Assembly (NCBI GenBank): GCA_965235115.1
Contig: OZ249436.1
Span: 22,134,001-22,198,000 of the forward strand
Direction of reading: 5' to 3'
Source: Laetmonice hystrix
Lineage: Eukaryota
DNA length: 64,000 nucleotides
This document shows positions 5,767 to 59,473 of this stretch, piece after piece; positions within the stretch are counted from its first letter, which is position 1, and the number at the start of each line of letters is the position of its first letter. The notes below the pieces were generated by a model. It had not been told where the DNA came from and searched no databases. It saw nothing but the letters and a program-made list of their open reading frames with translations. A program made the translations under genes and the position numbers.

Positions 5767-5874
5767 TGTTGTGAATAGCAATAGGGTGGTGGCGTTTGGT
5801 GTCTGACTCAGCCTATTCATACTCCCAGTCGGAGAATGGAGGCCCCATATTGTGTGAGGAGAACCTGCACAAGC
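5767..5874 (-). CDS. Candidate internal exon, unassigned (ACAGSPHTIWGLHSPTGSMNRLSQTPNATTLLLFTT)
   Basis: Acceptor ttatttcag| and consensus donor |gtgagt; 108 nt, phase 0/0, open frame. No homology recognised. Confidence 0.25.
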
Positions 5875-8060
5875 CTGAAATAACGTTCGACTGGAGGTAA
5901 ATTTTACGATGACAGGTCAGAGACTTAGGGCATGTGGTGTTAATACACCAACCGACCGTTACACTGCCACTTATAAATATTATACCCTGACATAACTTGG
6001 GCAAAATAACATACATAAATATTGTCCAAATTCTCTCGATGGTAGCCAAACCTCAGAGAGAAATGCTAAACATGTTTAAAAGATCATGCTGAGAAAAGCA
6101 TGATGCATATAAAAGAAACACTTTTTTATTAGTCCCTAAACAATAATCTCTTATGTTTAGTAAGATGGCAAGTCATATCTACGTTATGAACTTGTATCTC
6201 CGTTGCCATCCCGAAGTTTGTGGGCCTGTTTCAATGTAAAACAAAAGGAAAAATAGGTGTCAGTTTCTACCGCGTCCACACATGCGAGACAGCAGTAGTA
6301 TATGGAAAGAGTGGTTTAATGAAGGCTATAAAATAATGTAACACTACACTAAAACGCGTGTGCTACAGTCTATAATATACTATTATTATCAGAATTGATT
6401 TTTCACGTTTCTAAATATGTTTTTGCTTTGCTATATACTTCAGTATACGATTTCTAAAAAAAAACATACTTCGTCTTACGTTCCATTCCCTTGCCACATT
6501 CAGTGGTACAAATGTAAACACGCTCACGTTGTTTACTCTTGACGTTCGGCCCGCCATCGTACAGAATCCATGGCCTATATTATAAACCATGTATAGTATA
6601 GAATAATGCTGGTGGCTGCAGGAAGCCAGATTGTCTGATCAGAAGGACAGAAAATACCACGCTAGAACGCTGTGATTTTCGAGAACGCTTACAGTCACAA
6701 GTATCGATCGTGTAGGCAAGGCTTTTTACGGAGCGTCCCACGCTAATCGGTCAGGGCGTCCCCACTCCCCGGCCCCTTTTGTCTACAAATTGTATGGGTG
6801 CACCTTCAAATTAGACGCTGCTAACGCCCCACCCCTGTCACTGTTTCCTCCCAGAGACACTGGCCTAATGGAAGCGTACGAACGAACCCGTTCCACTGTT
6901 AGCCCCAGCAAACAGCCTACAGACGGACCCTTTGTGGCACAGTGTAAGAACCACCGACCTCGACTGGATATTCCCATGTGAAGTGGTCCTTGTAGGCGCG
7001 CCGCAGTAAGGCGCAGCACACTCGAGCTTGCTGACATAAAAACTGTATTAAAATGTCGACATTTTAATAACCCACCGGTCACGTGCCGGTGAATTGTGCC
7101 ACTAATCTGTCGCAAACGTGTGATTAACTGATGTTACACGTGGGATTAGTAGATTTTCATGGGACGTTGAATATTTAATGGAGAGTAAAGATGTTGGAGG
7201 GACGGGAAGGAGTGAGACTATCCCTCCATCAGTCATGTTGACGTCACACGGTCGGGGCACGCCGCCCGGCGGGTACACAGGGCAGTACTATACTATTCCC
7301 CACTCTTCTATACCCAACAAAGTATCATCTTCAAATCCCGTCCTCCCGTCTCGGGTTACTTGGACATTGAAGCAGATAAAGACTCGAAACAAATATTGTA
7401 CGTAGGCGTTGCTCGAATATCCCCTCATATGCGGTTGTATACATGTAAATATAGATGTACGTACATGGAAGTATTATGTAGGTCAATAGATCTATGTATT
7501 ATGAATCGTCTATACTCGGCGTCCCACACCTGAGTTCCCCCTTGGTACAGATACGATGAAAGCTGTGTAGAATCTGCAGGGCCATTGTGGTTTAGCTGTT
7601 AGAATTCGTTTATTTACATGATTGAGTACAGAACGGTTAGACATTAACAAAGTTACTTTCAATCAATGTGTCTCAGATCGAAAGTGTTACAAGCGTGAAT
7701 AATGAGGTACAAAGGTGGCTTACGTTGAAGTAATTATGACGGTGAAACCTACACGGGCGATGTGCCGTGGCTAGCGGCGTTTTCCATGTTTACACGGATT
7801 AGTGAAGTCTGTCCCCTGTGGTCCGGGCGTTGTGATGATTTCAATTATTAGAAAATTTAATAATCCACCTCGTCTTTCATTACGGCCAGGCCTGACGAGG
7901 CGGCGACTGGGACCAACTGACGATTAAAGTTGGGACAGTCTTTGTGCACGTATTGTCAGTCCCAATTGTCTCAGTGAGACTCCAACACCCCCCACTCCCC
8001 ACCCCTCCCACCCCCAACCCACACACACACCCCTCCGAGCCACACGTCTGCTACCCTATA

Positions 8061-8140: not shown

Positions 8141-9118
8141 CACACTAAAGCGACCACTCATTATTGAATCCTTTCAATTGGGATTTCTGAAGGAGAACAT
8201 GATACTTGGAGAATACTCCAGGCAGACAGATTGTTTGTTTCGGGTGTGCACGCCGTTTTATGGACTCTCCCACAAAATCCTAGAATGTGTGTGGTCTGTA
8301 GTAAATGAGCCTTGAAGGCGTCTGCCTTTAGTTCGAGCCACCGACTGTGGCGTAGGAATCCATCAAGGAAACAACCCACATCGTATTTTAGTTGAGACGA
8401 CCTGTACGTGAGGCGTATCCTGTGGTCGTTATTTTGACCACTTTTGGAAGGCCTTGGATCTTAGAGCACGTCGCACGTATTTAGTGTGATCGTGTACTCA
8501 GTGACACGCCGGCAGTCAGGACGTTGTATCGTCACCCCGGTAACGTACGTCACCACCCGGTCGTCAGTGGAGAGTGTCGGGAGGGAGGGTGAGGGTGAGG
8601 TGGTGTGAATACCATGTCGGTGTACCCATGCTGGTGACAGGCCCGCTCCGCTACCTCATCAATCACCAGCGCCCTCTACCGTCAGCGCCCCTACAACAAG
8701 TGTTGGCGCTCACTCGGAAGCGAGCAGTGCACATTGATGTATGAACAGACGATGTGCCGTAATGCTGGACGAATTTTTTTTTTCGCTCTTCTATTTTTTA
8801 AATGAAATATCTAACATTGTTAGAGCACAGATATGTTATGTGACATGGCACAAGGAGACCAGCGGGACGTGCCTCAACACCTTGCCCCCCACGAAGAATC
8901 TAGTCAGTCGCTGATAGTGACAATAGTTTCAAGTTACGTATACTATTTGTGTTATGTGTCTTACTTAAACGTTCTTTATTCAGAGTTTAATCTATTCAAA
9001 ATATATCGGCATATAGCCTTAATGATCTATGTCTACATTAGTAGGGGTAATTATTATTATATTTAAATAGGATTATGGTCTCCCTGACAAGCCACAGGTA
9101 TAGCATGGCCAAAAGGGA

Positions 9119-9467
9119 CATTTGCCCCCCGGACATCTGCCCCCGGACTTCTGCCCCCTAGGAATCTGCCCCCGAGACATTCGCCCCCGGACATTAACCC
9201 CTATAGTACTTCTGCTCCCCTAGGACCCTAACTTAACCCTAACCCTAACTCTAACCCTGTCCTACGGGTAGTACTTCTGCCCCCCTAGGACATCTGCCCC
9301 CAGACATTAGGTGGGCAGATGTCCTACAAGGGTTAATGTCCGTCGGGTGAATGTCTGGGGGGCAGATGTCCTAGGGGGCAGAAGTCCTCCGGGGGCAAAT
9401 CTCCGGGGGGCAAAAATCCGGGGGAAAATGGTCGGGGGGATGATGTACGGGGGACGGGGGGCAAATG
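9119..9467. mobile_element. Foldback/palindromic non-autonomous element with subrepeats and an internal (CCCTAA)-like tract
   Basis: Ends catttgcccccc ... ggggggcaaatg. The left arm has repeated ggacatctgccccc motifs, mirrored on the right as gggggcagatgtcc. The interior contains aaccctaaccctaactctaaccct. Confidence 0.65.
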
Positions 9468-9572
9468 CCATAGAATCGACTAAAAGTAACAAATATTAAA
9501 TACAGACTTCGGATATTCTCCCTCTCTTTCCCTCTCTCACTCTGTCTCACATTCTCCCTCTCTCACTATCTC

Positions 9573-9736
9573 NNNNNNNNNNNNNNNNNNNNNNNNNNNN
9601 NNNNNNNNNNNNNNNNNNNNNNNNNNNNNNNNNNNNNNNNNNNNNNNNNNNNNNNNNNNNNNNNNNNNNNNNNNNNNNNNNNNNNNNNNNNNNNNNNNNN
9701 NNNNNNNNNNNNNNNNNNNNNNNNNNNNNNNNNNNN
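9573..9736. other. Assembly gap (N run) following a CT-rich microsatellite
   Basis: Run of n characters. Confidence 0.98.
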
Positions 9737-11491
9737 GTTAGAGCGGGTCGTGGTGATTTGTTTTATCTGATCACATGAGTAGGACTGGGAGAGATGGATC
9801 TCAGCCTGTCTGTGGTCCCAACATCCATGTACAGTGACGTAAGGTTACCCTGACCGGCCGTCGTTTATCACTCACCCCTCCCGGCATGTGATCCCCCCCC
9901 CAACTACCCTACCCTCCTGCCCCTCCTCCTCCTCCATCTCCACTGCCGTATCTCATGTTGGAGTCCCGGTTACATGTGTAAGTTGTGGGGCCGTGGGGCT
10001 GGGCAGTGCTGGAGCTCGGCCATATCTGCCTGGTCCACATCGCGGCTGTTTGCTTTAGGCGCAAACTGACCCGCTACCACAGTCTGCCCCAAGTGGAGCC
10101 CACGTGCAGCTGTTGATGTGGACGTTATACGTACAACAATACACAGATCGACCAAGGTCAGGGGCCACAGGCCAAGGTCTCAGACTCACTCGGTGGGCTA
10201 GCTCAGAATGACAACAACGTTTAGTGGTATTGGGACCCAGAGTCTGGTAAGACTGATTGGTACGCGGAGGGAGGAGAGCATACGCTATATTTTATGCTCA
10301 CTTAAAGGAGTCAAGTGTTTTGTCCAACTTCATTCTTTCACATGTACACATGTACATGTATCATTATATTTCAAGTGTAATAATTCAGCCTAGATTGCAA
10401 TACCATCGATTGGATGTACACTTGCTAGTTCAGTGATTGCACAACAAATAATATGATTTTGTAGGTTTTGATTTTGTACTTTTTTTTATACAATCATGTC
10501 TCATGTATATGTTTTTCTTAAAGCAATCCAAAATGGAGACATGGGCTGTCGGGTTAGATAAGACATTAGACTAGGCCTACATGAATCAATAAATGTTTAC
10601 CCAGAGAAATGGAGAAATCTAATGAAATTCAATAATTCCAGTTGCCCGTTGTCGTCATGAAGCGAACGTCTCATGGCTGGTTGTTGATCTGGCATTGACT
10701 TGAACAGCCCATGAAATTAATTGGGCAATGAACCGGTGAACCGATGAAGCGATGAACAGATGTCTCCATTTTGGAGTCATTGAAATGAGAGCTAGTCTGT
10801 GATTGCTTTAAGGGTATAGAGAGAAGAACACTACGCATGAGCGTCAGACTTAACTCACCTAACAGTTCAATTGTTCCAACGCACAAATTATTAAGTACCG
10901 AAGTGCAATCGACCCCCGGCTCGAAGATTAGGCCATGCACATAAAAAATACTTGTTTAGCGTCCCCGCCCGACCTGAGAAATGTCCCCGACCTAGATTTT
11001 ATTTTATTTTTTATTTTTCAAAGCAACCTGTAAACCTGTCAAAACAACGTTTCCCCACCTATTTAGAACTGTACAGGTTTAGCTTTCACTGGAACAAAGA
11101 TTTAAACAGCAATATTTTCATGTTTTCTTCTTCAATTTCTAGCACTAAAACAAGTATTTTTTTGTGTGGCCTTAATGGCAATCGCATATCATAAGGTATC
11201 GTGCCCAATACCAACTACATGTACACCACTGACACCTCCTAAAACGATGGTGAAGCAGAACAATTGACCCCTACACATCATGTTACGGAATCCATGTGTC
11301 CTATAGATGGGCTATACATCATTTTGAGGACCCATTCCGATATTAAACTATAGTTCTGGCACTGGTTTCGTGTATATTATGGTATATAAAAGTTCTCTAT
11401 CATTGAGCACGACAGCATGAGTATGGATGAATGCAACATGATAGGTTAATAATTATATTGGATGCACACTATAATGAGGTACAAAAATGTA

Positions 11492-11721
11492 TATAATAGA
11501 TAGATAGAAAGAACGGGTACATTAGTATTTATTGAGAACGTCTCCGAATACTTTCTGTTATAGGATTCTGGTTCTCGATCAGACTACTGGTCGCATAGAA
11601 ACGTATAATAGATAGATATAAAGAACGGGTACATTGTGTACATGTTTATTGAGAAGGTCTCCGAATACTTTCTGTTATAGGATTCTGGTTCTCGATCAGA
11701 ATACCTGTCGCATAGAAACGT
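11492..11721. repeat. ~115-bp tandem duplication (x2)
   Basis: gatagata..aagaacgggtacatt...ccgaatactttctgttataggattctggttctcgatcaga...gtcgcatagaaacgt occurs twice. Confidence 0.85.
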
Positions 11722-14700
11722 GTAAACTTTACAAAAGACGCCGATATTATATTACATCCTGTCCCTTACTCGAGACGCCGCGCAGAAGCAGAAACATGAC
11801 GACGTTGTAGACTTTCATGACAATTTCAAGGGTCGACCTAAACATTATGGCCCAGTCATGCGACCAGTTCAATGGAGCCATGCAGTAGACATCTCTGGCC
11901 GGGATCCGACACACCTGGATGGCAGGTGTGGGCGTCCACCGCAGACATATATAAACAATTACAGGTGCGATCCCCGACCTGAGCATCAAAGGGCCGTCTA
12001 GAGGTGGTGGATTATATGTGAAGTATGTGTAAGGAATGCCCTATGTCTTCATGCAGAGACTTCAGCCCGACGACCCTCTACTCTCCCCGGCTCAAGTCTG
12101 TCCCTGGCCACCGCCCGTACACCTACACACCGTGCAGCCGGCCGTCGCCGACCTACTCCCAGACCCGCCGTCTCTCTATATATGACAAGGGTTATAAATT
12201 TTTGGTTAGATCCTGACAGACCGCCTTGACAGCGGGCAAGGTTATGGCAGCGTGGTTGGCGTCAAGGCAGGGGCGCGGAGGGCGGCTACTGACGCTCCTT
12301 TTCTGGTTGCCGACCGCGGCCGGAGCCTGTATGCGGCCGCGCGTTGTCTTGACGGTTTCTTGTCTAGACGGAAGGCGACGGTCTTATCGGAACCGGCATC
12401 ACGACCGGCCACTCGGGCGTCTTTACACCGCCGGCTTCTTGTGTCGTTTCCTTACGTCGAGCTGTCCTGTCACCCCACCGGACGCCTAGCCTGGTGTGAG
12501 GCTATACAAGCCCGGGTACGGCACATAGAAATGTTGCGTTTTTCTCAGGGTGCTGTTGACAGCGCCCCACGCGGGACGCTGACGTCAAGTTACGGAATCA
12601 TTGAATGTGATAATGATCTGTGAGCTATATGCGGCGGGCGGCCGACCCCACCCCGCCCATCACGGCACGCTATTAGGTCGATCAGATGATGTTCGATACG
12701 CAATATGTCTTCAATCTGCGCAATATGGTAGGATGGGAAAGCTCGCTAAACAAACGTTGGCAGCGGGAGGTTTGTCTAGGTGTGACCATTATGGTGTGAC
12801 TGGCCGTCATTGCGGACGGAAGGGTTGTGGTCACATTATCCCCACGGCTATCAACCTGTATAATGTCCCCACCTACATCAACTGTAATACACTTCAATCA
12901 GTGACGCCTGATTTTTTCTCCTCGGTTAATATTACAGTAATCTAAATGTAATGTCATTGTAGTTACATAACCCCAGTCCTAAAGGTTTGTATATCGATAC
13001 TATCCCCGTGGTGGCTTAGTGATCTGTGAGATAGAGAGCTGCATAATTGTTAAAACTGCGTTCTCTTTTTCTTTGCACAGAGCATAAAAGGTCAGAAAAA
13101 GAATACGTGCATACGTTAACACGTATGGAGAGACATGTAGTACTGTAGTTGTAAATTTAAAAATATTCCTCTAATCCCTTCTAAGCTTCATTAGACCAGC
13201 AACTAACTGTCTCTCAAGGTTTCATGACCTGAGGCCTTGTGATGCCTTAACCCATTTCAAGATGCACACAACGTATTTCTTCCCACCAGACCTTGACCTG
13301 TATAATACTTTCCTATATTTAGGGCCAGTATTGCTCCCTTGATGTCACCTTTGTAGCCGAGTGTGTTTACACTGCACCATTCTCGTCTATAGAATTTACT
13401 CCGTTCCCGAACCGAGGTATGTATGTGGTCGGTCTCTCAAGTACCTGTTAGATCCTCGATCGTTGCGTTCAAATTGTAAACTCCTGTAGCCCCCTCCCCT
13501 TCCTAGCCCCCCCCCCCCACACACACACACACGGTCTACTTTTCGCTTTCTCCTGCGTGGGTGGGAAGACCCTGTATGTGTTATATGCCGGGAAGTAAGA
13601 AATGTGTGTTGGAGGGGGCACAATGCACGTAAGTCTTCAGTGTAACACCTCAAAAGAATGTCACGAGCAGGAGAAATACCTGTATACACTGCAGTTGAAT
13701 GTGGATATGTTATGTGTGTGTGTTTTATGTGGTTCCATGATGTATGTTTCATGTGTTGAATTGTCTCCATCCGTATACGTTATCAGTTAAATGGTCAAAC
13801 GGATACCGCCTTATGTTGGCCGTGCGGTGCATGCATGACTGGATCTTTTTTAAGCCTATGTTTAGATTGATGAGCAGTGCTCCAGCTGTATACAAAATAA
13901 ATGTATACTCTCAATACACATAATATCTCTCGCGTCTTTTGTTTTTTCATAGCTTGAACTGGCAGAGACTTGACTTGATTTATGTGCAAAAAAAAGTGAT
14001 AAATCCATAGAAGTGCGGGTGCATGGGAGGGTCGGACTTCCGAACGGTTGGATCTAACATCGACGATAACAACCAGTTGACGTGAACGCCACCATATTAT
14101 AAACTGCGCCTCTCGACCGGCCCTCGATCGTAGGTCACGGCCAGTTGTGTTGTTGATATAAACGAAAGTGTTCCTCACTCCTTTGTTAGGTTTTAGATGC
14201 CAGCTTTCCAGTCATCCCTGTCACGTTACTCCCATATGAATTGTTAATTACCTCTAATTAATCGCGCCGTGGGTTCGTGCATCAAAATTAAAAGTAAACA
14301 AACAATTAGAGGCGTGTCACGCTCGTTAGCCAAAACAATCGTCGCCAACCGGTCCGATTAACTGCGGCGAATTTCCGTGACGACACGAACTGTTCTCGTT
14401 CCGTCATGTTAAGCCGACACGAAAATCTCGACGCAATTCTCGCGTACGGCGAGACGAGCGTTTTACGACATTGGACCGGAAGCGGGCGTCTGCTTCCACG
14501 TTCTCCGTTACAGGACGGATCCGGAGTGTGAATATGAAAACATCAAGTTGAGCGTGTAAATACTAAGACGTGTTTGGGATGCAGCATGGTGTTTAAACTG
14601 CTTCTGTTTGACATATGAAACGCGATACATGGCTATGTGGCGGCCAGCCTCGGTACCATATACCTCCGGCGTCGAACGATGACATGTCTGATCCTTTGTC

Positions 14701-17667
14701 GCCATGCCGAGCAGTAAACACAGTCGGCCAGATGAGACGCCCGTCATAATACAGTAAACGTGGCTATTGTTCTCAGTGACGCCACGGGCTTTGAGGCCGG
14801 TTCTTGCAGTTTCCGATCCTACCACGTTGGCCGTGTTCTTGGCCGGATTTCGGAAGCACGGCGACTCGCCGAGTGTTGAGTTGGAGATTACTACGCGAGG
14901 CACTTGTTGTGACTGCTTTCCGTTTACGCCGCGTATCAGGCTTTGTTGCCACCCTGCTGGTATTGTGTTAGGAACGTTCGGCAAACAAAATAATCTGACG
15001 GGCTTGTGTACTGTCTCCACCCGCTCTGCCAATGGTCAGACGGGTATTAGTCTATCGCCACCATTGTCGACGTCTTCTCGCCTTTTTAAATTTCCGTTAT
15101 TCCGATCACAGCGGTTTGGATATGGCAGCAAATCCCTGCGATCGTCGAGATATCTGTACGCAGTGACATGGAGGGGTTGGCCAGAGCTTTACACGTCGAT
15201 CTCTGGGACTATAGACGGCAGATGTCGTGTACCCCCCGACTCAGCGGGCTATCTATGACCCACATGGTACGGGGTGGGTGGGGGTGGGGGCTGAGGGGGT
15301 TGGGGGGTCGTCTCATCGCCATATGCTGCACTGATTCGGACTGAATACAGATACGAATAGCGAGAAAAGTGTAGAACATCTTCATACATAAACCAATATA
15401 TCCCTTTAAATAAGTTATATTACTTGTCCATTTTTAAAAGGTATAAATAGCATTATTACCATCACATTATGACTATGACTCACCATTATGATAACGGTGA
15501 TGAAACAATCATGATGATATTAGTAATAGTAACGATGACAATACCTGAGAAATATACATCAGACTAATATCTCCACATTTATTAATAATAATCTTCTATT
15601 GCCCCTGGCATTTTTTAAACCAAACTAGAACTCCTAAAGGTTTCCAATACAGGTTAATTCACTCACAATCAAGCTCTACAAAGTACCACCTGATTTCTAA
15701 TAATATAGTCCTAATTGATATTCTTTTCTCTTTATTTTGTTGCCTTTAGACGTCCAATTAATATAGATTCGGATTGTTAACCCAAATATGGGGTCATAAT
15801 TCTGTATAAATAAAAGTAGGCTAATAATTAATGATAATGATTTACACGTATATTATACTCAATCATCGGTAAAATGAATGACAACCAGTGACAGCGTGGT
15901 ATCCGCTTCTTGTCATTTTGGCTGACGTTACGTCACGCATCACCTTTTACACATGTAGATCTCGTCAACACGCCCGTCATCTGTCAATGCTGCATGGTAT
16001 TAAGGAATCCCAGTCCGACTGCTTACCAGGTAATATATCTTTTGCTTTACATACTGACACCTGCCAATAGCTGTCCTTTCTTCCCACTTAGTATACTAAG
16101 TGTCAGTTTATACAAGACGAGTCGTGTTCCTGAACGATGGCTAGCAGCCTCGACATTTAACGTTTTTGATCATGCGACTTTCTCGAACAGATTGAGGTGT
16201 TCGTCTCAAAGCGACTAACAAGTGTTCCTTGATTTGCATTACAATAGTTTTCGTCTACCATGAAGGCTGCCCGGCCCGCGAGGCTATCGGAAGGATTTGG
16301 CAGGACCATATGGCCTGGATTTTACACCACACAAAGACAACTATTGTCTTCAGTGCGGGACTTGTGATTAGGTGCGGGGCTCGTCGCCTCCCTCGGCTGC
16401 CACCACCGCCGGCTATTCGGGCACTTCGTGTTGCAAAAACCCTGCCCCGTGTTTGTTTTCTGTCAGCAGTTGGCCTCGCGTCCATTCAACCTGATTGTTT
16501 TTACAGTCTAAAATGTTGATTCCGTGAGACACGACGTACAATTTCAGACTCCCATCCAACCCGCTTTGCTATTGTTGGGATGTGCGAGTGTATATATTTA
16601 TATCTAAAGCGATTTCGATTTTTGGAAAGTTATGGTGATATTATATCAGTGCCTGTCAGTGTATAAGACAAACATTTTCTATTCCAATAGACCAATATAA
16701 TACAGATGGTAACAATTTTGTAATGATTTAGATCTACTCAAGATGTAATTCAATCCAATAAAATATAGCATTCGGATGAAATGAGTTGAAACACATGTGA
16801 AACGCTTCGAAAATAAACCTAATAGCTGTAACTCTCCTGCTCTCTCTCTCTTTATTAAATCATCTCTCTTTATTAAATCAGTTTCTTTCCATTTATCACA
16901 GTTCAATCATTTTGTTGACCCTTTTCTAAAAGTAAAACCCTAGAATTTGTAAGGGCAAAAAGGAAACCCCAGACAACATAGCTACATGTGTCAGCCACAC
17001 ACCTTCCTTGACTTTACCAATACATGTTTCTTAAGGTTGTTGTTGACTTTTTGGGGGCTCCATGGACATGTAAGAAATGTTACCTTTGACACACATTTAT
17101 CTGTATAGATGTTCTCGCTCGACTTCTGGAGGCAGTGAGCATCTCAGAGCGTCCATTCACAGTCGGCACATAAATAAAATCGTGCTGCTATAACATCGTA
17201 AACAGACACGGACAATTTGATGTCGCTCGGAGGGATGTGGTTGGAGTTTCTACCGCTAGCATCACGCATACCATCCAGAGGTGGGGGCGTTTTTTTGTTA
17301 TTACTTTTATTACATAGCTTGATTTATCACGGATTGCCCGGTGCATGGCCCGCCTCATGTTATGGAGCGACACCCAGGAGAATGCTGGCGCCATTTGGAT
17401 CCCTGCCACAGACCACAATGGAAAACAGACACAAAAGAAGCACCGTACAACAATAGCACTAGCCCACACGAGACAAAACCCGCGCCTAAACAGATTACGC
17501 GAACGGCAGTGCTGTTTTTGCCTGCCCCAGCGTGTAAATAACCACAGCAAAGAAGGCCAAGGTAGGCTTGAACCTGCTCATACCAGTCATGTTTTAACTT
17601 CATGTAGAAAAGACGACTCACATCCCGAGTTTGTCTTTGACTTCCCCGCGCGGTGTTAGCAATGATC

Positions 17668-37901: not shown

Positions 37902-39110
37902 AGATTGTGGGTCCGTGTAGCTGTCATTGTCCCTCAGTCAGACACTGAGAGCTGAACGATACGGGCAGTGTTTGATCCTCCGCTCGCCCGCCGTCACTCT
38001 GACCGACTCCAGATTGTGGGTCCGTGTAGCTGTCATTGTCCCTCAGTCAGACACTGGGAGCTGAACGATACGGGCAGTGTTTGATCCTCCGCCCGCCGTC
38101 ACTCTGACCGACTTCAGATTGTGGGTCCGTGTAGCTGTCATTGTCCCTCAGTCAGACACTGGGAGCTGAACGATACGGGCAGTGTTTGATCCTCCGCCCG
38201 CCGTCACTCTGACCGACTCCAGATTGTGGGTCCGTGTAGCTGTCATTGTCCCTCAGTCAGACACTGGGAGCTGAACGATACGGGCAGTGTTTGATCCTCC
38301 GCCCGCCCGCCGTCACTCTGACCGACTCCAGATTGTGGGTCCGTGTAGCTGTCATTGTCCCTCAGTCAGACACTGAGAGCTGAACGATACGGGCAGTGTT
38401 TGATCCTCCGCCCGCCGTCACTCTGACCGACTCCAGATTGTGGGTCCGTGTAGCTGTCATTGTCCCTCAGTCAGACACTGAGAGCTGAACGATGCGGGCA
38501 GTGTTTGATCCTCCGCCCGCCCGCCGTCACTCTGACCGACTCCAGATTGTGGGTCCGTGTAGCTGTCATTGTCCCTCAGTCAGACACTGGGAGCTGAACG
38601 ATACGGGCAGTGTTTGATCCTCCGCCCGCCCGCCGTCACTCTGACCGACTCCAGATTGTGGGTCCGTGTAGCTGTCATTGTCCCTCAGTCAGACACTGGG
38701 AGCTGAACGATACGGGCAGTGTTTGATCCTCCGCCCGCCCGCCGTCACTCTGACCGACTCCAGATTGTGGGTCCGTGTAGCTGTCATTGTCCCTCAGTCA
38801 GACACTGAGAGCTGAACGATACGGGCAGTGTTTGATCCTCCGCCCGCCCGCCGTCACTCTGACCGACTCCAGATTGTGGGTCCGTGTAGCTGTCATTGTC
38901 CCTCAGTCAGACACTGGGAGCTGAACGATACGGGCAGTGTTTGATCCTCCGCCCGCCCGCCGTCACTCTGACCGACTCCAGATTGTGGGTCCGTGTAGCT
39001 GTCATTGTCCCTCAGTCAGACACTGAGAGCTGAACGATACGGGCAGTGTTTGATCCTCCGCCCGCCCGCCGTCACTCTGACCGACTCCAGATTGTGGGTC
39101 CGTGTAGCTG
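37902..39110. repeat. 105-109-bp satellite, 11 full copies plus one partial
   Basis: Unit agattgtgggtccgtgtagctgtcattgtccctcagtcagacactg(g/a)gagctgaacgatacgggcagtgtttgatcctcc(gccc)ngccgtcactctgaccgactcc; length varies with the number of gccc. Confidence 0.97.
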
Positions 39111-39131
39111 AGTAGCCGTGTAGCCGTGTAC

Positions 39132-39235
39132 GGAGGATCAAACACTGCCCGTATCGTTTAGCTCTCAGTGTCAGCTGTCACTGTCCCTCAGTCAGACACT
39201 GAGAGCTGAACGATACGGGCAGTGTTTGATCCTCC
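39132..39235. repeat. Hairpin with 41-bp arms, built from the adjacent satellite unit
   Basis: ggaggatcaaacactgcccgtatcgtttagctctcagtgtc, a 22-nt loop, then gacactgagagctgaacgatacgggcagtgtttgatcctcc; one mismatch. Confidence 0.92.
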
Positions 39236-39334
39236 TGGATCCGGACTGGATCAGACCGTTCTGTGATCCAAACCGGCACCTGGGCCCGGTACGACCAAAT
39301 GTTTGTACAACGACAGACCTGACAGTCACAGTCC

Positions 39335-40014
39335 CTGAGGGCGGGGGTAGGGGGTTTGAGTGTGGGGGTAGAGGGTCTGAGGGCGGGGGTAGGGGATTTG
39401 AGGCTGGGGGTAGAGGGTCTGAGGGCGGGGGTAGGGGGTTTGAGGGTGGGGGTAGGGGGTGTGAGGGCGGGGTAGAGAGTCTGAGGGCGGGGTACAGGGT
39501 CTAAGGGCGGGGGTAGGTGGTTTGAGGATGGGGGTAGGGGTCTGAGGGCGGGGGTGGGGGGTCTGGGGGCCGGGGTAGGGGGTCTGAGGGCGGAGGTAGG
39601 GGGTCTGAGGGCGGGGGTAGGGGGTCTGAGGGCGGGGGTAGGGGGTCTGAGGGCGGGGGTAGGGGGTCTGAGAGCGGGGGTGGGGGGTCTGAGGGTGGGG
39701 TACGTGGTCTGAGGGCGGGGGTAGGGGGGCTGAGGGCGGGGGTGGGGGGTCTGAGGGTGGGGGTGGGGGGTCTGAGGGCGGGGGTAGGGGGTCTGAGGGC
39801 GGGGGTAGGGGGTCTGAGAGCGGGGGTAGGGGGTCTGAGGGCGAGGGTAGGGGGTCTGAGGGCGGGGTAGGGGGTCTGAGTGCGGGGGTAGGGGGTCTGA
39901 GGGCGGGGGTAGGGGGTCTGAGAGCGGAGGTAGGGGGTCTGAGGGCGGGGGTAGGGGGTCTGAGGGCGGGGGTACGGGGTCTGAGGGCGGGGGTAGGGGG
40001 TCTGAGTGCGGAGG
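39335..40014 (+). repeat. G-rich 20-21-bp minisatellite, about 32 copies, with G-quadruplex potential
   Basis: Unit tctgagggcgggggtaggggg; three G-runs of 3 or more per unit. Confidence 0.95.
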
Positions 40015-40658
40015 CAGATATAGTTCATCGCTGACCTTGGTATGGATATTTTACTTTACCACAGTACACCAAAGATTGTACTAGGATACAATCTTTGAGT
40101 ACACCTTAAGTCATTAATGAAGCGTCATATAATAGGAATATCTCCTTTATGTTTCTATCATTTATTTTATACCACAGCTGGCAAATACGCATGCTACATT
40201 TCAATATGGCAATGGCTGCTGCCAAAGTACTTTGGGCGGAAGACCACCAAAAGGTTATTGCCAAAGTACCAATCAAAATACAGTATTTCTACTTTGGCAG
40301 CAACAAGCCAGGGTAATTGCTGCCAAAGTACCAATGGGCGACTGGCTTACAAACTGCTTGTTGCCTGATCCTGCCAAAGTACTTTGGAAGCAAGAAACAT
40401 GTATACGGTCAACTCGGGGTTGATGCATGTAACAAAGTACTGTGTCCGCATTATAAAGCCACACGATTGTGCAGAAGACCGGCCGTGGGCTTCAGTATCA
40501 AAGTACTTTGTCAGCAACTTTATCAGGAACTCTTATTGCACATGTGGACGAAGAACTTTGTCTGGAAGCGCTGTTACCAAAGTCTATGGGTACACATGCA
40601 CTGAACTGTGAAAGCACAAAAGTTGTTAGGGGACGTTCAGACTATTACCGCGTTATAT

Positions 40659-40808
40659 CAGTGGCGGATCCGGGGGTAGGGATTTAACCCCCTAGCCAAT
40701 TTTGTCTTTTTTTCACCATTGAACGGTCTTAATTGTCCATGACTACTCCCCTCCCCCAGAAAATTCTTCCCTTAACCCCGCCCCTTCCTAAATCCCGCAT
40801 CCGCCCTG
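40659..40808. mobile_element. Small MITE-like insert
   Basis: Ends cagtggcggatcc ... gcatccgccctg (imperfect TIR); no TSD found. Confidence 0.4.
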
Positions 40809-41400
40809 TATCAATACGGTTTTTAATACCAAAGTAGGCCTACTTTGACAGGAAAAAGTGTAATTAGGCCTATACTACAATTTCGAAGCATGACCTACTG
40901 AGCCAACGTCCCTTTTGTCTGGAAACATGAAATATTTGGACCTGAGATTTAGTGTTGACACACTTTTTCATGACACACAAGGACGTTTTTGATGGCGAAG
41001 TACTTTGTCAGGTGACGCTGTCTTAACGTGACGTTTATTGACAGGAAGTAAGTCAGGAAGTCAAGTGGTACTATATGTTGAACATGAGCTTTATTGCTAA
41101 CGACCCTTCACATTGGACATAGAGAATTACAACTGTCGGTGTGGAGAAAATCTTAGGTGTAAAAGCAAAAGGTATACTCGTAGTTTGCTGACGTAGTCAA
41201 GGTAACCTGGTAATGTAGGCCTACTTATACATGTAGGCCTATATAATTTGGAGATGCCAATTAACATGCGAAACTGTGTAACCCTGAAAAAAAGCCTTTC
41301 AGAACTTCCTTCGCGAGTTACAGTAAAACAGTAATTTGGCCTGAATCTGTATAGTAATATGGAACACTTGGAAAAAGTGGACACCAGTGGCAACAATAAT

Positions 41401-42152
41401 TTGGTAATCGCAAAGCAGCCTAACCCCCTACCCCTTGCTGCCACAGTACTTTGGTAATAGCAAAACAGCCTAACCCCCTACCCCTTGCTGCTTCAGTACT
41501 TTGGTAATAGCAAAGCAGCCTAACCCCCTACCCCTTGCTGCCGCAGTACCTTGGCAATAACAATGCAGCCTAACCCCCTACCCCTTGCTGCCACAGTACT
41601 TTGGTAATAACAAAGCAGCCTAACCCCCTACCCCTTGCTGCCACAGTACCTTGGCAAAAACAATGCATCCTAACCCCCTACCCCGTGCTGCCACAGTACT
41701 TTGGTAATAACAAAGCAGCCTAACCCCCTACCCCTTGCTGCCACAGTACCTTGGCAAAAACAATGCATCCTAACCCCCTACCCCTTGCTGCCACAGTACC
41801 TTGGCAATAACAATGCAGCCTAACGCCCTACCCCTTGCTGCCACAGTACCTTGGCAATAACAATGCAGCCTAACGCCCTACCCCTTGCTGCCACAGTACC
41901 TTGGCAATAACAATGCAGCCTCACCCCCTGCCCCTTGCTGCCACAGTACTTTGGTAATAGCAAAGCAGCCTAACCCCCCTACCTCTTGCTGCCACAGTAC
42001 TTTGGTAATAACAAAGCAGCCTAACCCCCTACCCCTTGCTGCCACAGTACCTTGGCAATAACAATGCAGCCTAACCCCCTGCCCCTTGCTGCCACAGTAC
42101 CTTGGCAATGACAATACAGCCTACCCCCCCCCCCCCCCTTGCTGCCACAGTA
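41401..42152. repeat. 50-bp minisatellite, left array, about 15 copies
   Basis: Unit taaccccctaccccttgctgccacagtac(t/c)ttgg(t/c)aataacaa(a/t)gcagcc. Confidence 0.96.
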
Positions 42153-42401
42153 ACAATTTGTTAACCGATGTTGTCAGCTTTGGTTTCCATTGTCTAAGCT
42201 GTTCACATTGATAATGAAACCAGACATGACAATTGTCGCACTGGATTTTTTTTGGCGCGGCCAGTCCCTGTGCAGTCCCTCGCTCCACAGTCATTTGAAT
42301 GGTTCGGCCAAGAACTGCTGGTACGTATGTTGGCGGTAGTCTGGTACGTGGAGCTGCGTGAGTGATGGAGGTGCCACTCCTCTCACGAGTGCATCTGCAT
42401 T
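42153..42401 (-). pseudogene. Frameshifted exon encoding a Ulp1(C48 peptidase)-C-terminus-like helix followed by a PHD finger, probably from a DNA-transposon gene
   Basis: Acceptor attcttgttaattcag|AAT. Removing one A at each of two A-runs (~42295 and 42246-53) gives NADALVRGVAPPSLTQLHVPDYRQHTYQQFLAEPFNDCGARDCTGTGRAKKIQCDNCHVWFHYQCEQL. C-x4-C ... IQCDxCxxWFHxxC is a PHD pattern. The Ulp1 resemblance is weaker. Confidence 0.6.
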
Positions 42402-42562
42402 CTGAATTAACAAGAATGTCGACACTCATCAATAAATCAATTTTATTTTTACCAAATTGATCAGTCTCTTTGCCATAAATGGTAAAGTTTATGGTTACAG
42501 TGCAAGTAATCAAAGAGTCTATCAATTTTAATTGAAATGACAGATGGCATGGTTTCTGATTG

Positions 42563-43800
42563 AATATTACCAAGATAATGTGAGAGCAAGGGGCAGGGCG
42601 CTAGGCTGTATTGTTATTGCCAAGATACTGTGGCAGCAAGGGGCAGAGGGTTACGCTGCATTGTTATTGCCAAAGTACTGTGGCAGCAAGGGGCAAGGCG
42701 TTAGGCTGCATAGTTATTGCCAAAGTACTTTGGCAGCAAGCGGTAGAGGGTTACGCTGCATTGCTATTGCCAAAGTACTGTGGTAGCAAGAGGTAGGGGG
42801 TTAGGCTGCATTGCTATTGCCAAAGTACTGTGGCGGCAAGGGGCAAGGCGTTAGGCTCCATGGTTATTGACAAAGTACTGTGGCAGCAAGCGGCAGAGGG
42901 TTACGCTGCATTGCTATTGCCAAAGTACTGTGGTAGCAAGAGTTAGGGGGTTAGGCTGCATTGCTATTGCCAAAGTACTGTGGCAGCAAGGGGCAAGGCG
43001 TTAGGCTGCATGGTTATTGACAAAGTACTGTGGCAGCAAGCGGCAGAGGGTTACGCTGCATTGCTATTGCCAAAGTACTGTGGTAGCAAGAGTTAGGGGG
43101 TTAGGCTGCATTGCTATTGTCAAAGTACTGTGGCAGCAAGGGGCAAGGCGTTAGGCTGCATGGTTATTGACAAAGTACTGTAGCAGCAAGGGGCAGGGGG
43201 TTAGGCTGTATTGTTATTGCCAAAGTAACTGTGGCAGCAAGGGGTAGGGAGTTAGGCTGCATTGTTATTGCCAAGGTACTGTGGCAGCAAGGGGTAGGGC
43301 GTTAGTCTGCATTGTTATTGCCAAAGTAATGTGGTAGCAAGAGGTAGGGGGTTAGGCTGCATTGTTATTGCCAAAGTACTGTGGCAGCAAGGGTAGGGCG
43401 TTAGGCTCTATTGTTATTGCCAAAGTACTGTGGCAGCAAGGGGTAGGGGGTTAGGCTGTATTGTTATTGCCAAAGTAACTGTGGCAGCAAGGGTAGGAGG
43501 TTGGCTGCATGGTTATTGCCAAGGTACTGTGGCAGCAAGGGGTAGGGCGTTAGGCTGCATTGTTATTGCCAAAGTAATGGTGCAGCAAGTGCAGCACAGT
43601 TAGGCTGCATTGTTATTGCCAAGGTACTGTGGCAGCAAGGGGTAGGGCGTTAGGCTGCATTGTTATTGCCAAAGTAATGTGGTAGCAAGAGGTAGGGGGT
43701 TAGGCTGCATTGTTATTGCCAAAGTACTGTGGTAGCAAGGGGCAAGGCGGTAGGCTGCATTGTTATTGCCAAAGTACTGTGGCAGCAAGGGGTAGGGCGT
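42563..43800. repeat. 50-bp minisatellite, right array, about 24 copies; reverse complement of the 41401-42152 array
   Basis: Unit ttgttattgccaaagtactgtggcagcaaggggtagggggttaggctgca. Confidence 0.96.
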
Positions 43801-43902
43801 ATCATAATCACATCTGTAATAGCTAAGGTCTGGCCTTGTTGCACCCCTATAACAATCATGGCAAAATGATTTTAGCTTCGCTCTGAGTTACCGTTAATCA
43901 TG

Positions 43903-44238
43903 TCAAATAATGTAGAAATGAACTAACCTTATCCCCTCTGGGATCCGTATGTCTTGTCTTCCTGGGTGTTTTTGTAGATACGTCTTCACAGTTTCTGAGG
44001 CGTATATGTGATAAAAAACATTCCGACCCTGCTTGTACTGGTCAAATGCCTCAGAAAAGCTATGGTCCGTCGAAAACGTGTCACCCAGCTTCATTACAGC
44101 AGGACTAGTCAAGATGGCACCTCCTGGTCCTAGTCTTGGCGCCAAAAAATCTAGGTCATATGTAACAAAGCTTCTGATTGGTACTTTGACAATAGCGTTT
44201 TGGTCGTCTTCCACCCAAAGTACTTTGGCAGTAGACAC
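43903..44238 (-). other. Protein-like ORF fragment (~110 codons), possibly part of the same decayed gene as the PHD exon
   Basis: Open, non-repetitive frame (…YDLDFLAPRLGPGGAILTSPAVMKLGDTFSTDHSFSEAFDQYKQGRNVFYHIYASETVKTYLQKHPGRQDIRIPEGIR) on the same strand, with a possible donor ag|gttagt. No family recognised. Confidence 0.25.
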
Positions 44239-45797
44239 TCCGTTTCAATATACTATGTTTTCAAGCATATTTATGCTTTATGTTCAGCCCCATCACGATA
44301 TGTTCTCATTGATAACTGTCAAGACAGGGTCAACCTTGCATGGTTCATACACCTTGTAATCAACGAGTATGGAATAATGTTATACTGTTTTTTTTACGAA
44401 CCCTCCCCCCTCCCTGCCCCCGCCCTGGTAACTATTACAGAGATATTCTGACAGGCAAGGAATCAGTACACGACAGCTTGTCTGAGCTGTACTTCTCCTT
44501 CATCACTGTCTATTAGCAATGTGACCGTATCGTGAATAGTCGACCAGTTGGCCACCACGTGTTCACCATTTCTCTTCCATGGTATAACAAAGAAAGGTTG
44601 GGATATAGGAGGCTTTTCTTCACGCGTGCCTCCGAATATTATATTGTAAGATATGTAAGACATCGTTCGAATTAAAAGGCACTAATTTATTATTTTTGTG
44701 TGTGCAATTAGACATATAAAATGTATACTTTCTGCGTAAAACAGTAGAACAATTATTGTGTCACTCATTGCGTCAGGTGAGGACGATGGATTCAGCGTCC
44801 CGTGTCAAGGATTTACGAAAAACACGACGACCAACAAAATATGCTGGGATGGCATTAACACATCTGCGACTCTTACGTAAAGAGTCGGGGGTGAATTGAA
44901 GCGTGACTCGCCCCCGGCGGCGATAAAAGCCAGCCCGGGCGGGGTGGGATTAGAACCCGGCTCGGCGCTCCTTAATACACCCCCACGGTGCCAGTGTCCG
45001 CCACCCCAGCCATCAGGTCGACTTCACACGGCAAGGACGGGGTGTAGAAAATGACGCCAACGGGTCAGTGACTGTGATTATGTTGATTTCACGCTGGTTT
45101 ACTCTCTCACCTGTGGGCCTGCGAGGTGGGCCCGTGTTTTGGGTACATATTTAGGAGGCAAATTCAAGCTTAATGAGCTGAGAGTAAGTCTCAGCTAGCC
45201 CTCCCCCATTGACCATTGTCAGTATTACCACAAGCGAACATTTCCTCACTTAGTCTGGTATAACTTTAAGATCTGGTGATTTTCTACTCACCAAGGTACC
45301 ATGTGGACTCTAACATAACCAGACAAAAGCCACATTGGGACTGAACTTTACAAGAAGTCTGTCTGGAATAAAATACGGTTGTTTCAGTGTGTAGAATATC
45401 ACTAAATGATGCCCCTTGTCAGCAAATTGAGTCTGTATAGTATACTGTAGGTGTGTGGAGGGGGGGGGGGGGTCGGGGGCCCCTTTTATCAAACAGTGCC
45501 CCTAAAATGTTCAAGATTGATAATGAAGTGGAGTTGGCAGCTTCTGGAAGCTCTGTGTTGACCAGGTGCCCCATGAAGTCGAATTCGACCCACCCTTTGG
45601 AAATCCTGGAGACACCTATGTATGGACGGATATTTATAAAGCTCCCAAAATAAGTAAATTCCAGTGACATATAATTTATAGTCTCTTTATGCCCTAATCG
45701 GGTTAAAAGGGCGATCAGTGGATTCCTAATGATAACAGGAAGTGATATGTAATCTCTCCTCCAAATATAGTGGAGACAACTGATGGGTTATTGTTAT

Positions 45798-59254: not shown

Positions 59255-59473
59255 NNNNNNNNNNNNNNNNNNNNNNNNNNNNNNNNNNNNNNNNNNNNNN
59301 NNNNNNNNNNNNNNNNNNNNNNNNNNNNNNNNNNNNNNNNNNNNNNNNNNNNNNNNNNNNNNNNNNNNNNNNNNNNNNNNNNNNNNNNNNNNNNNNNNNN
59401 NNNNNNNNNNNNNNNNNNNNNNNNNNNNNNNNNNNNNNNNNNNNNNNNNNNNNNNNNNNNNNNNNNNNNNNNN
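59255..59473. other. Assembly gap (N run) following a (TTAC/TTGC)n microsatellite
   Basis: Run of n characters. Confidence 0.98.

What the first reader, a model, noticed from the sequence alone, without database searches (positions are those of the whole stretch)
40219..44231. Nested inverted-repeat (foldback-like) structure enclosing a decayed Ulp1/PHD transposon-type gene
Seen: a 57-bp outer inverted repeat (40219-40275 vs 44175-44231, 5 mismatches), and inside it two oppositely oriented arrays of one 50-bp unit (~15 and ~24 copies) separated by ~410 bp of unique DNA. All repeats share the palindromic core ccaaagtac(tttgg), which also recurs degenerately across 40200-41000. The spacer holds a spliced-type exon that, after two single-A corrections, encodes a Ulp1-C-terminus-like helix plus a PHD finger. 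Known: Ulp1 and PHD domains are carried by Ginger1 and some Mutator-type DNA transposons, and foldback elements have long modular inverted arms. Inference: this may be an undescribed foldback family whose transposase-binding motif expanded into mirror-image minisatellite arms around captured or residual coding sequence.
Basis: partly seen in the sequence, partly recalled or inferred. Interest (0 to 1): 0.72.

Follow-up and report, generated by a model that had tools for sequence, protein, structure and literature searches.

The report
Non-autonomous Mutator transposon with foldback interior
This is one copy of an abundant, recently mobile "jumping gene" of the Mutator type that has lost its transposase and keeps only two gene scraps between two mirror-image minisatellites. 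It is a well-documented member of a known kind, not a new class of element.

Summary
The element is window 40208-44242 (4,035 bp). It has 68-bp imperfect terminal inverted repeats, a perfect 9-bp target-site duplication (TTTCAATAT), and two inverted 50-bp arrays (about 15 and 24 units) around a 432-bp spacer.

It is a transposon family, not a local rearrangement:
- The genome holds 118 left and 117 right termini; reversed-pattern controls give 0.
- 17 of 20 fetched copies have the same layout.
- 13 of 15 copies have perfect AT-rich 9-bp duplications.
- Read-derived contigs contain the empty site for this copy.

A related species' assembly holds 15.4-15.7 kb relatives with the same termini and 9-bp duplications. 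Their layout is: exon 1, the same 50-bp array in intron 1, a ZSWIM1/3-like MULE transposase, Ulp1-like protease exons, and a last exon with a complete PHD finger. The window's spacer is that last exon, read in three frames (two frameshifts) and cut inside the PHD finger. The right arm keeps exon 1.

The family is Mutator-type, not Ginger1. The second array is a derived inverted duplicate. No cognate transposase was found in this genome. Verdict: new member of a known kind, modest interest.

The parts
40199..40207 (.). Left copy of the 9-bp target-site duplication TTTCAATAT
   Evidence: Direct reading. An empty-site contig joins 40198 to 44243 with 9 letters that fit either side.
40208..40275 (+). 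Left terminal inverted repeat, the 3' end in transposase sense. It starts GGCAATGGCTGCTGCC and holds two CCAAAGTAC motifs.
   Evidence: 58/68 match to the right TIR. The 28-mer has 118 genome hits against 0 for the control. Homology among copies starts exactly at 40208.
40276..41390 (.). Left arm. It has subterminal repeats with exact or degenerate CCAAAGTAC motifs (exact to about 40390, degenerate to about 41000), then about 1 kb of unknown origin.
   Evidence: Present in nearly all copies at 89-96% agreement with the consensus. Only 40208-40394 matches the autonomous relative, at 96%.
41411..42152 (-). Left 50-bp minisatellite (14.8 units): the derived, inverted duplicate of the intron-1 array
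   Evidence: It ranges from 7 to 23 units in other copies. It has no counterpart at this position in the relative.
42153..42584 (-). Spacer: a 383-bp remnant of the last intron/exon junction of the ancestral element, edged by degenerate array units
   Evidence: 81% identity over 383 bp to L054:14696-15077. At least 86 candidate copies in the genome, the top 40 at 95-100% over the full length.
42178..42401 (-). Last-exon remnant after an acceptor-like TTAATTCAG. It carries the Ulp1-domain C-terminal stretch (to about 42297), the first PHD cysteine pair (42298-42248) and the PHD core IQCDNCHVWFHYQC (42252-42178). Frameshifts lie near 42297 and in the A-run 42246-42253. The finger is cut before its last Cys pair.
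   Evidence: tblastn of the intact L054 exon hits three consecutive frames, E 2.5e-27. Pfam PHD E 6e-5 to 3e-6, profile positions 10-36 of 47 only. Positions.
42585..43800 (+). Right 50-bp minisatellite (24.3 units): the ancestral intron-1 array, in the same orientation relative to exon 1 as in the autonomous relative
   Evidence: The relative has 57 units of the same unit right after exon 1.
43928..44094 (-). Exon-1 remnant of the transposase gene (ATG at 44094, donor-like AAG|GTTAGT at 43927): the start of the ZSWIM3_N-type N-terminal domain
   Evidence: Pfam PF21599 E 1.2e-4, profile positions 1-44 of 102. 64% identical over 86 aa to exon 1 of the relative, E 1.7e-38. The frame is open in most copies.
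44175..44242 (-). Right terminal inverted repeat, the 5' end in transposase sense. Read inward it starts CGGAGTGTCTACTGCC.
   Evidence: The 28-mer has 117 genome hits against 0 for the control. 69/72 identical to the 5' end of the relative (sequence, read directly).
44243..44251 (.). Right copy of the 9-bp target-site duplication TTTCAATAT

Best explanation
Window 40208-44242 is one copy of a multi-copy, non-autonomous DNA transposon of the Mutator (MULE) superfamily.

**How it moves (inferred).** It moves by cut-and-paste using a transposase supplied in trans. The transposase is presumed to recognise the roughly 70-bp imperfect terminal inverted repeats and the subterminal repeats built on the near-palindrome CCAAAGTACTTTGG. 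It makes a 9-bp staggered cut at AT-rich targets. Binding of the transposase to this motif, and any effect of array length on mobility, are inferred, not shown.

**How it arose.** It derives from a large autonomous element of about 15 kb. That element's gene starts with a short exon 1, is interrupted in intron 1 by a 50-bp minisatellite carrying the same motif, and continues through a ZSWIM1/3-like MULE transposase, an Ulp1-like protease and a terminal PHD finger. In this family almost the whole gene was deleted. What remains is exon 1, the intron-1 array, a 383-bp piece of the last intron/exon (Ulp1 tail plus truncated PHD), and both ends. A second, inverted copy of the array was joined inside the PHD coding sequence. 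This created the foldback interior before the family amplified. The origin of that inverted copy, for example template switching during gap repair, is also inferred.
For: **Family and mobility**
- 118 and 117 near-exact termini, against 0 for reversed controls.
- The same layout in 17 of 20 fetched copies, with array sizes varying from 7 to 49 units.
- Perfect 9-bp duplications in 13 of 15 copies plus the window copy, 94% A+T across 15 duplications (13 from this genome, including the window copy, and 2 from the relative).
- An empty-site contig in two runs joins 40198 to 44243, skipping 4,044 bp, with 9 shared letters.

**Superfamily**
- The right-arm ORF hits ZSWIM3_N. Its homologue P0005 (69% identity) carries the same family.
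- P0005 lies in elements L054:3477-18872 and L056:3273-18955, which have the same termini and 9-bp duplications ATACTTTAA and ATAACTCTA.
- These elements contain the same 50-bp array x57 after exon 1.
- They contain exons with ZSWIM1-3 RNaseH-like (E 5e-14 and 8e-21), MULE (E 3e-10) and helical domains.
- They contain a His exon with Peptidase_C48 at E 4.7e-4; 28 of 30 nearest named Atlas clusters are C48.
- Their last exon has a complete PHD finger.
- The two relatives are 99.7% identical over 7.6 kb at different loci.

**Derivation**
- The spacer is 81% identical to the relative's last exon region, read in three frames.
- Homology stops 32 bp before that exon's stop, where the inverted array begins.

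**Constraint on the ends**
- The right end was not used to select copies. It agrees 99.7% with the consensus over the first 60 bp, against 89-96% further in.
- The ends are about 96% identical to the relative, against 74-81% for the rest.
Against: - No cognate transposase was found in this genome. The best protein match is 33% identical. DNA of the relative's interior finds only two 0.7-kb relics at 77-78%, and nothing for the Ulp1 exons. The source of transposase for a family with a polymorphic insertion is therefore unknown.
- The autonomous relatives come from another species' assembly; their flanks match only repeats here at 70-83%. They are cousins, not the direct ancestor. About 1 kb of the left arm has no counterpart in them.
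- The C48 call rests on one exon just under Pfam's cut-off (20.5 versus 20.7 bits) plus a language-model look-alike search.
- Exon joins were not modelled or verified with RNA.
- The high identity of the left end among fetched copies is partly an ascertainment effect, because copies were picked with that stretch.
Confidence: 0.9

Rival explanations
1. A Ginger1-type transposon remnant. Ginger1 transposases also carry Ulp1 and sometimes PHD domains.
For: Ulp1 and PHD occur in Ginger1 transposases (PMC2836005). The window holds an Ulp1-tail-plus-PHD remnant.
Against: Ginger1 makes 4-bp CCGG/CCGT duplications and has TGTNR termini. Here the duplications are 9 bp and AT-rich, and the ends read GGCAAT and CGGAGT. 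The relative with the same ends encodes a MULE/ZSWIM1-3-type transposase, not a Gypsy-like integrase.
Confidence: 0.01
2. An independent foldback family, in the sense of Drosophila FB or other foldback elements of this genome. Its arms would be the functional termini and its transposase would be unrelated to MULEs.
For: It has inverted arrays of tandem repeats sharing a motif with the ends, and 9-bp duplications as in FB. Other foldback families exist in this genome (earlier notes s1-317215, s1-319923; not checked here).
Against: The arrays are internal, separated from the ends by 0.37 and 1.1 kb of non-inverted sequence. Only one array exists in the autonomous relative, where it lies in an intron. 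The relative encodes a MULE transposase.
Confidence: 0.03
3. A local inverted duplication or assembly artefact around a host PHD-protein exon, not a mobile element.
For: The window is crowded with minisatellites, and long inverted repeats are error-prone in assembly.
Against: More than 100 dispersed copies have the same ends and layout, each with its own 9-bp duplication. An exact empty site is found in read-derived contigs.
Confidence: 0.01
4. The family is a dead relic. It has been immobile since the loss of its autonomous partner, and the presence/absence polymorphism is old standing variation in a highly heterozygous species.
For: No cognate transposase was found in the genome. The interiors of copies differ by 5-10%. 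The empty-site haplotype differs from the assembly by 7 substitutions and 2 indels in about 300 bp of flank.
Against: The termini are near-identical among copies, including the right end, which was not used for selection. Most duplications are intact. This is a variant of the best explanation (same identity, different activity state), not a true alternative.
Confidence: 0.3

Closest known systems
MuDR-type (Mutator/MULE) DNA transposons carrying Ulp1 protease and PHD domains. They are recorded in Repbase for hydra and lancelet and described in plants (KI-MULE/CUMULE type), as cited in Bao, Kapitonov and Jurka 2010 (PMC2836005).
   Same: 9-bp duplications and TIRs. In the autonomous relative, a MULE transposase together with an Ulp1-like protease and a PHD finger.
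   Different: This copy is a gene-less derivative with an inverted-array interior. I could not compare it with the Repbase entries, so identity with a named family is untested.
Rehavkus group of Mutator-related transposons (Dupeyron et al. 2019, PMC6446971; Tribolium satellite study, bioRxiv 10.1101/2024.12.02.626372)
   Same: 9-bp duplications, TIR length within 26-400 bp, a PHD finger in the encoded protein, and minisatellites carried inside the element with variable unit number.
   Different: Here the ancestral minisatellite lies in intron 1 near the 5' end, not before the 3' TIR. An Ulp1 domain precedes the PHD. The best Pfam matches are the ZSWIM1-3 families. Phylogenetic membership was not testable.
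Foldback-type elements with MULE transposases (Drosophila FB; Tm1 of root-knot nematodes, PMC3169594)
   Same: 9-bp duplications, composite ends with short repeated motifs, many non-coding derivatives and few or no coding copies.
   Different: In FB and Tm1 the repeats build the terminal inverted repeats themselves. Here the inverted arrays are internal and one of them is a secondary duplication.
Mu killer (Muk) of maize, an inverted partial duplication of MuDR (PMC1563492)
   Same: A rearranged Mutator derivative in which part of the element is present as an inverted repeat.
   Different: Muk is a single locus and duplicates transposase-coding sequence, and it has been shown to give a silencing hairpin RNA. 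Here the inverted part is an intronic minisatellite, the element is multi-copy and mobile, and no RNA evidence exists.

Membership tests
Mutator / MULE superfamily | Target-site duplication of about 9 bp (8-11) | tested here: met
   Window copy plus 13 of 15 other copies have perfect 9-bp duplications. Both autonomous relatives do too. The empty site has 9 shared letters.
Mutator / MULE superfamily | Terminal inverted repeats shared by autonomous and non-autonomous members | tested here: met
   68-bp TIR, 58/68. The ends of L054 and L056 are 96% identical to the window's ends.
Mutator / MULE superfamily | Autonomous member encodes a MULE-type DDE (RNaseH-like) transposase | tested here: met
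   Met in a relative from another species: PF21056 positions 3-57 and 64-128 (E 5e-14, 8e-21) and PF10551 (E 3e-10). Not found for this family in the window's own genome.
Rehavkus group | PHD finger in the transposon-encoded protein | tested here: met
   Complete PHD in the last exon of the relative (PF00628 positions 9-47, E 2.5e-4). Truncated PHD in the window. Whether it is fused to the transposase is unknown.
Rehavkus group | Minisatellite before the 3' TIR or in subterminal inverted regions | tested here: inconclusive
   A minisatellite is present, but in the relative it lies after exon 1 at the 5' side only. The 3'-side array exists only in the derivative family.
Rehavkus group | Transposase clusters with Rehavkus reference sequences | not testable with these tools
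Ginger1 | 4-bp CCGG/CCGT duplication, TGTNR termini, Gypsy-integrase-like transposase | tested here: not met
   9-bp AT-rich duplications, ends reading GGCAAT and CGGAGT, and a MULE transposase in the relative (criteria from PMC2836005).
Foldback elements (structural class) | Long terminal inverted arms built of tandem repeats that reach close to the termini | tested here: not met
   The arrays start 1.2 kb and 0.44 kb inside the ends. The arms between arrays and ends are not inverted repeats of each other.
Peptidase_C48 (Ulp1) domain, for the spacer peptide | Catalytic His-Asp-Cys core | tested here: not met
   No C48 hit in any frame of the window's spacer; only the stretch after the catalytic Cys survives. 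In the relative, upstream exons carry HWVLLVAD (PF02902 E 4.7e-4, 20.5 versus 20.7 bits) and QTDGSSCGVF. 28 of 30 nearest Atlas clusters are C48.
PHD finger, for the spacer peptide | Cys4-His-Cys3 zinc-binding pattern | tested here: inconclusive
   The window keeps Cys3, Cys4, His and Cys5 (PF00628 positions 10-36 of 47, 23-28 bits against a cut-off of 24). A C-x4-C first pair lies in another frame. The last Cys pair is lost at the array junction.

The most novel reading that the evidence does not exclude
The foldback derivative is more than a passive passenger. Read-through or exon-1-driven transcription across the two inverted copies of the intron-1 minisatellite would give a long hairpin RNA. 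That RNA would match the autonomous element's pre-mRNA and the motif-bearing DNA. With more than 100 copies, the family could then act as a Mu-killer-like silencer, or as a transposase sink through its many binding motifs. Either role could have driven the autonomous partner out of this genome, while related species still keep active 15-kb copies.
Probability: 0.06. Interest if true: 0.6.

Novelty: new member of a known kind. Interest (0 to 1): 0.3.

Why it matters
This case settles what looked like a strange nested hairpin around a gene fragment. It is an ordinary product of transposon decay: a Mutator-type element reduced to its ends, one intronic minisatellite (duplicated in inverse) and two exon scraps.

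Three points may be useful to specialists:
- In the autonomous relative, a minisatellite carrying the terminal-repeat motif sits inside intron 1 of the transposase gene, between the exons of the N-terminal domain.
- The transposase is of the ZSWIM1/3 type and is coupled to Ulp1 and PHD modules, which may bear on the origin of the ZSWIM1/3 host genes.
- A family with more than 100 copies and a still-polymorphic insertion has no cognate transposase in the assembly. That gives a tractable case for studying how non-autonomous families outlive or outcompete their partners.

Tried and rejected
- **Library search with the spacer peptide.** phmmer against 1.84 billion representatives gave 4 weak hits, all spurious repeats or generic PHD proteins, and no parent protein.
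- **ESM Atlas with the right-arm ORF.** No usable hit.
- **Autonomous copy among fetched loci.** L040 and L049 are truncated copies. The L046 and L042 insertions are unrelated. No internal sequence is shared among them.
- **Pfam MULE and ZSWIM1-3 hits in the genome.** None lies next to this family's listed termini. The terminus lists were cut at 100 rows, so this is not exhaustive.
- **Candidate fuller copy.** A ZSWIM3_N hit at C12:24926015 lies 148 bp inside a right terminus and has a 205-aa open frame. No transposase or interior DNA match falls there.
- **Solved structures.** Only a non-significant match of the His exon to a chlamydial CE-clan deubiquitinase (E 0.58) and nothing for the Cys exon.
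- The spliced gene model of the relative was searched exon by exon by reference.
- N stretches (9573-9736, 59255-59473) were not touched.
Full report

Yes.
- **Arrays.** Tandem Repeats Finder reports two arrays of one 50-bp unit, 41411-42152 (14.8 units) and 42585-43800 (24.3 units). They are inverted relative to each other, with arms up to 589 nt at 85% complementarity.
- **Core motif.** CCAAAGTAC occurs 26 times in the 64-kb window, all inside the element, against 0.82 expected by shuffling.
- **Borders.** The borders need correcting. Homology among copies begins at 40208 and ends at 44242. The terminal inverted repeat is 68 bp, 58/68. The element is flanked by a perfect 9-bp direct repeat, TTTCAATAT (40199-40207 and 44243-44251).

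**2. It is a mobile family.**

- **Copy number.** The left 231 bp finds at least 279 candidate places in the 627-Mb genome, and the spacer finds at least 86. The 28-nt left and right tips occur 118 and 117 times with at most one mismatch. The reversed control patterns occur 0 times.
- **Layout.** Of 20 copies fetched with 10 kb of context, 17 show the same order: left end, left arm, array, spacer, inverted array, right arm, right end. The arrays range from 7 to 23 units on the left and 7 to 49 on the right.
- **Duplications.** Thirteen of 15 complete copies have a perfect 9-bp target-site duplication. Fifteen duplications (13 from this genome, including the window copy, and 2 from the relative) are 94% A+T.
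- **Empty site.** Contigs built from public reads of the source sample include one, in two runs, that joins 40198 directly to 44243. It skips 4,044 bp, with 9 letters fitting either side. That is the exact empty site. This insertion is therefore heterozygous or polymorphic, and the borders are confirmed independently of the assembly.
- **Artefact excluded.** Mis-assembly or a one-off local rearrangement is excluded.

**3. What the coding scraps are.**

- **PHD in the spacer.** The minus strand of the spacer gives a partial PHD match (PF00628, E 6e-5 to 3e-6, 23-28 bits, profile positions 10-36 of 47). No Peptidase_C48 match appears in any frame.
- **Right-arm ORF.** The minus strand of the right arm holds a conserved ORF. 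It matches the first 44 positions of ZSWIM3_N (PF21599, E 1.2e-4) and ends at a donor-like AAG|GTTAGT.
- **Route to the relative.** A word-based protein search with that ORF found P0005, 69% identical and carrying the same Pfam family. Its encoding contigs, from another assembly (ENA ERZ26222911), gave the key evidence.

**4. The autonomous relative.**

L054:3477-18872 and L056:3273-18955 are 15.4 and 15.7 kb elements. Their tips are the same as the window family's. Their own 9-bp duplications are ATACTTTAA and ATAACTCTA, at unrelated loci.

Their layout in L054 coordinates:

| Feature | Position | Evidence |
|---|---|---|
| TIR | 3477-3547 | |
| Exon 1 | 3644-3922 | ZSWIM3_N positions 1-45 |
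| 50-bp array, 57 units, same unit as in the window | 4098-7038 | |
| Exon, first half of the ZSWIM1-3 RNaseH-like domain | 8291-8605 | E 5e-14 |
| 732-aa open exon: second half of that domain, MULE, ZSWIM1-3 helical | 10001-12199 | E 8e-21, 3e-10, 6e-6 |
| Exon with HWVLLVAD | 13814-14020 | Peptidase_C48 E 4.7e-4, 20.5 bits against a cut-off of 20.7; 28 of 30 nearest named Atlas clusters are C48 |
| Exon with QTDGSSCGVF | 14505-14669 | read directly |
| Last exon with a complete PHD finger | 14828-15109 | |
| Nested reverse-transcriptase element, present in both copies | 15040-17627 | |
| 3' end | to 18872 | |

The two copies are 99.7% identical over 7.6 kb, so the relative is young in its own host. 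I searched these exons one by one by reference.

**5. How the window copy maps onto the relative.**

- **5' side.** The right end plus right arm match the relative's 5' 430 bp at 74%, and the TIR itself matches 69/72.
- **Spacer.** It matches L054:14696-15077 at 81% over 383 bp.
- **3' side.** The left terminal 187 bp match the relative's 3' end at 96%.
- **Frames.** The intact last exon of the relative aligns to the window in three successive frames: residues 1-43 at 42425-42297, residues 44-60 at 42298-42248, and residues 59-83 at 42252-42178. Combined E is 2.5e-27. The first is shared by all copies. The second lies in an A-run whose length varies among copies.
- **Cut in the finger.** Homology ends 32 bp before the relative's stop codon, so the last Cys pair of the finger is missing. 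The inverted array begins there.
- **Which array is ancestral.** The right array has the same orientation relative to exon 1 as the relative's intron-1 array. The relative has no array after its PHD exon. The right array is therefore ancestral. The left array is a derived inverted duplicate that arose once, before the family amplified.
- **Unexplained part.** About 1 kb of the left arm (roughly 40395-41390) has no counterpart in the relative. Its origin is unknown.

**6. Mechanism.**

Shown:
- Cut-and-paste-type insertions with 9-bp AT-rich duplications.
- Ends far more conserved than interiors. The right end was not used to select copies. It agrees 99.7% with the consensus over the first 60 bp and 99.1% over the next 60, against 89-96% further in. 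The left-end figure is partly an ascertainment effect, because copies were picked with that stretch.
- Ends about 96% identical across species, while the rest of the homologous sequence is 74-81% and the flanking repeats are 70-83%.
- An array unit that contains a 16/16 copy of the inner TIR motif and an 18/19 copy of the TIR tip.

Inferred:
- The transposase binds this near-palindromic motif through its N-terminal domain.
- The arrays add binding sites. The Tribolium preprint cites evidence that more repeats in foldback termini strengthen transposase binding and excision.
- The gene loss and the inverted array arose by interrupted gap repair with template switching.

**7. No transposase source in this genome.**

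- The best match to the relative's 732-aa exon is 33% identical (C21), and two decayed fragments reach 41-49%.
- The relative's interior DNA finds only two 0.7-kb relics at 77-78%.
- The Ulp1 region finds nothing but a short unrelated repeat.
- Pfam MULE and ZSWIM1-3 hits are not adjacent to this family's listed termini.
- The flanks of the relatives match only repeats here, so that assembly is a different species.

Who mobilised the family remains open.

**8. Comparison with known elements.**

- **Mutator versus Ginger1.** The 9-bp duplication and a MULE transposase place the family in the Mutator superfamily. Ginger1 makes 4-bp CCGG duplications, has TGTNR ends and encodes an integrase-like transposase. 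It is excluded.
- **Ulp1 and PHD in Mutator elements.** These are already recorded for hydra, lancelet and plants (PMC2836005).
- **Rehavkus.** Rehavkus elements share the 9-bp duplication, a PHD finger and carried minisatellites (PMC6446971; bioRxiv 10.1101/2024.12.02.626372). Membership in that group could not be tested for lack of reference sequences, and the minisatellite's position differs.
- **Other foldback families here.** Earlier notes of this scan report other foldback families in this genome with 8-bp duplications. I did not check them, and this family is distinct.

**9. Verdict.**

This is a new, well-characterised member of a known kind. Interest is modest. The open points are the missing transposase source and whether the inverted intronic arrays have any regulatory effect.

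Noticed in passing
L054:3477-18872 and L056:3273-18955 (ENA ERZ26222911): Two young (99.7% over 7.6 kb), apparently intact 15-kb MULE elements in another species' assembly. They have a ZSWIM1/3-like transposase, Ulp1 and PHD exons, a 57-unit minisatellite in intron 1, and a nested reverse-transcriptase element carried along at the same position in both copies.
   Followed up: partly
window 40014-40198 and 44243-44357: The empty-site haplotype differs from the assembled flanks by 7 substitutions and 2 small insertions in about 300 bp. This suggests a very heterozygous species or a second individual in the reads.
   Followed up: no
window 37902-40011: Two unrelated minisatellites lie directly upstream of the insertion: 109 bp x 11, and a G-rich 21 bp x 32 that ends 188 bp (40012-40199) before the element. 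The window holds at least 14 separate minisatellite arrays.
   Followed up: no
G000:C21:3393866-3395008: A different ZSWIM1-3/MULE-type gene with long open frames (359-495 aa). It is the best hit in this genome for PF21056 and PF10551, and is only 33% identical to the relative's transposase. It could be another MULE or a domesticated copy.
   Followed up: no
G000:C12:24925867-24926161: A copy whose exon-1 frame stays open for 205 aa instead of 111, 148 bp inside a right terminus.
   Followed up: no
L046:1143-7320; L042:4322-6309 and 8778-9731; L048: Some copies carry large unrelated insertions (6.2 kb, 2 kb). Others are short derivatives without the spacer, for example L048, or a 1.1-kb pair of ends at C1:45531348-45532492. 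Read contigs show several internal deletion joints shared by runs.
   Followed up: partly
L031 and L036, right flanks: Two copies have imperfect duplications, and their right flanks both continue with a similar TTAAAGGC-type sequence. This may be a secondary event at the junction.
   Followed up: no
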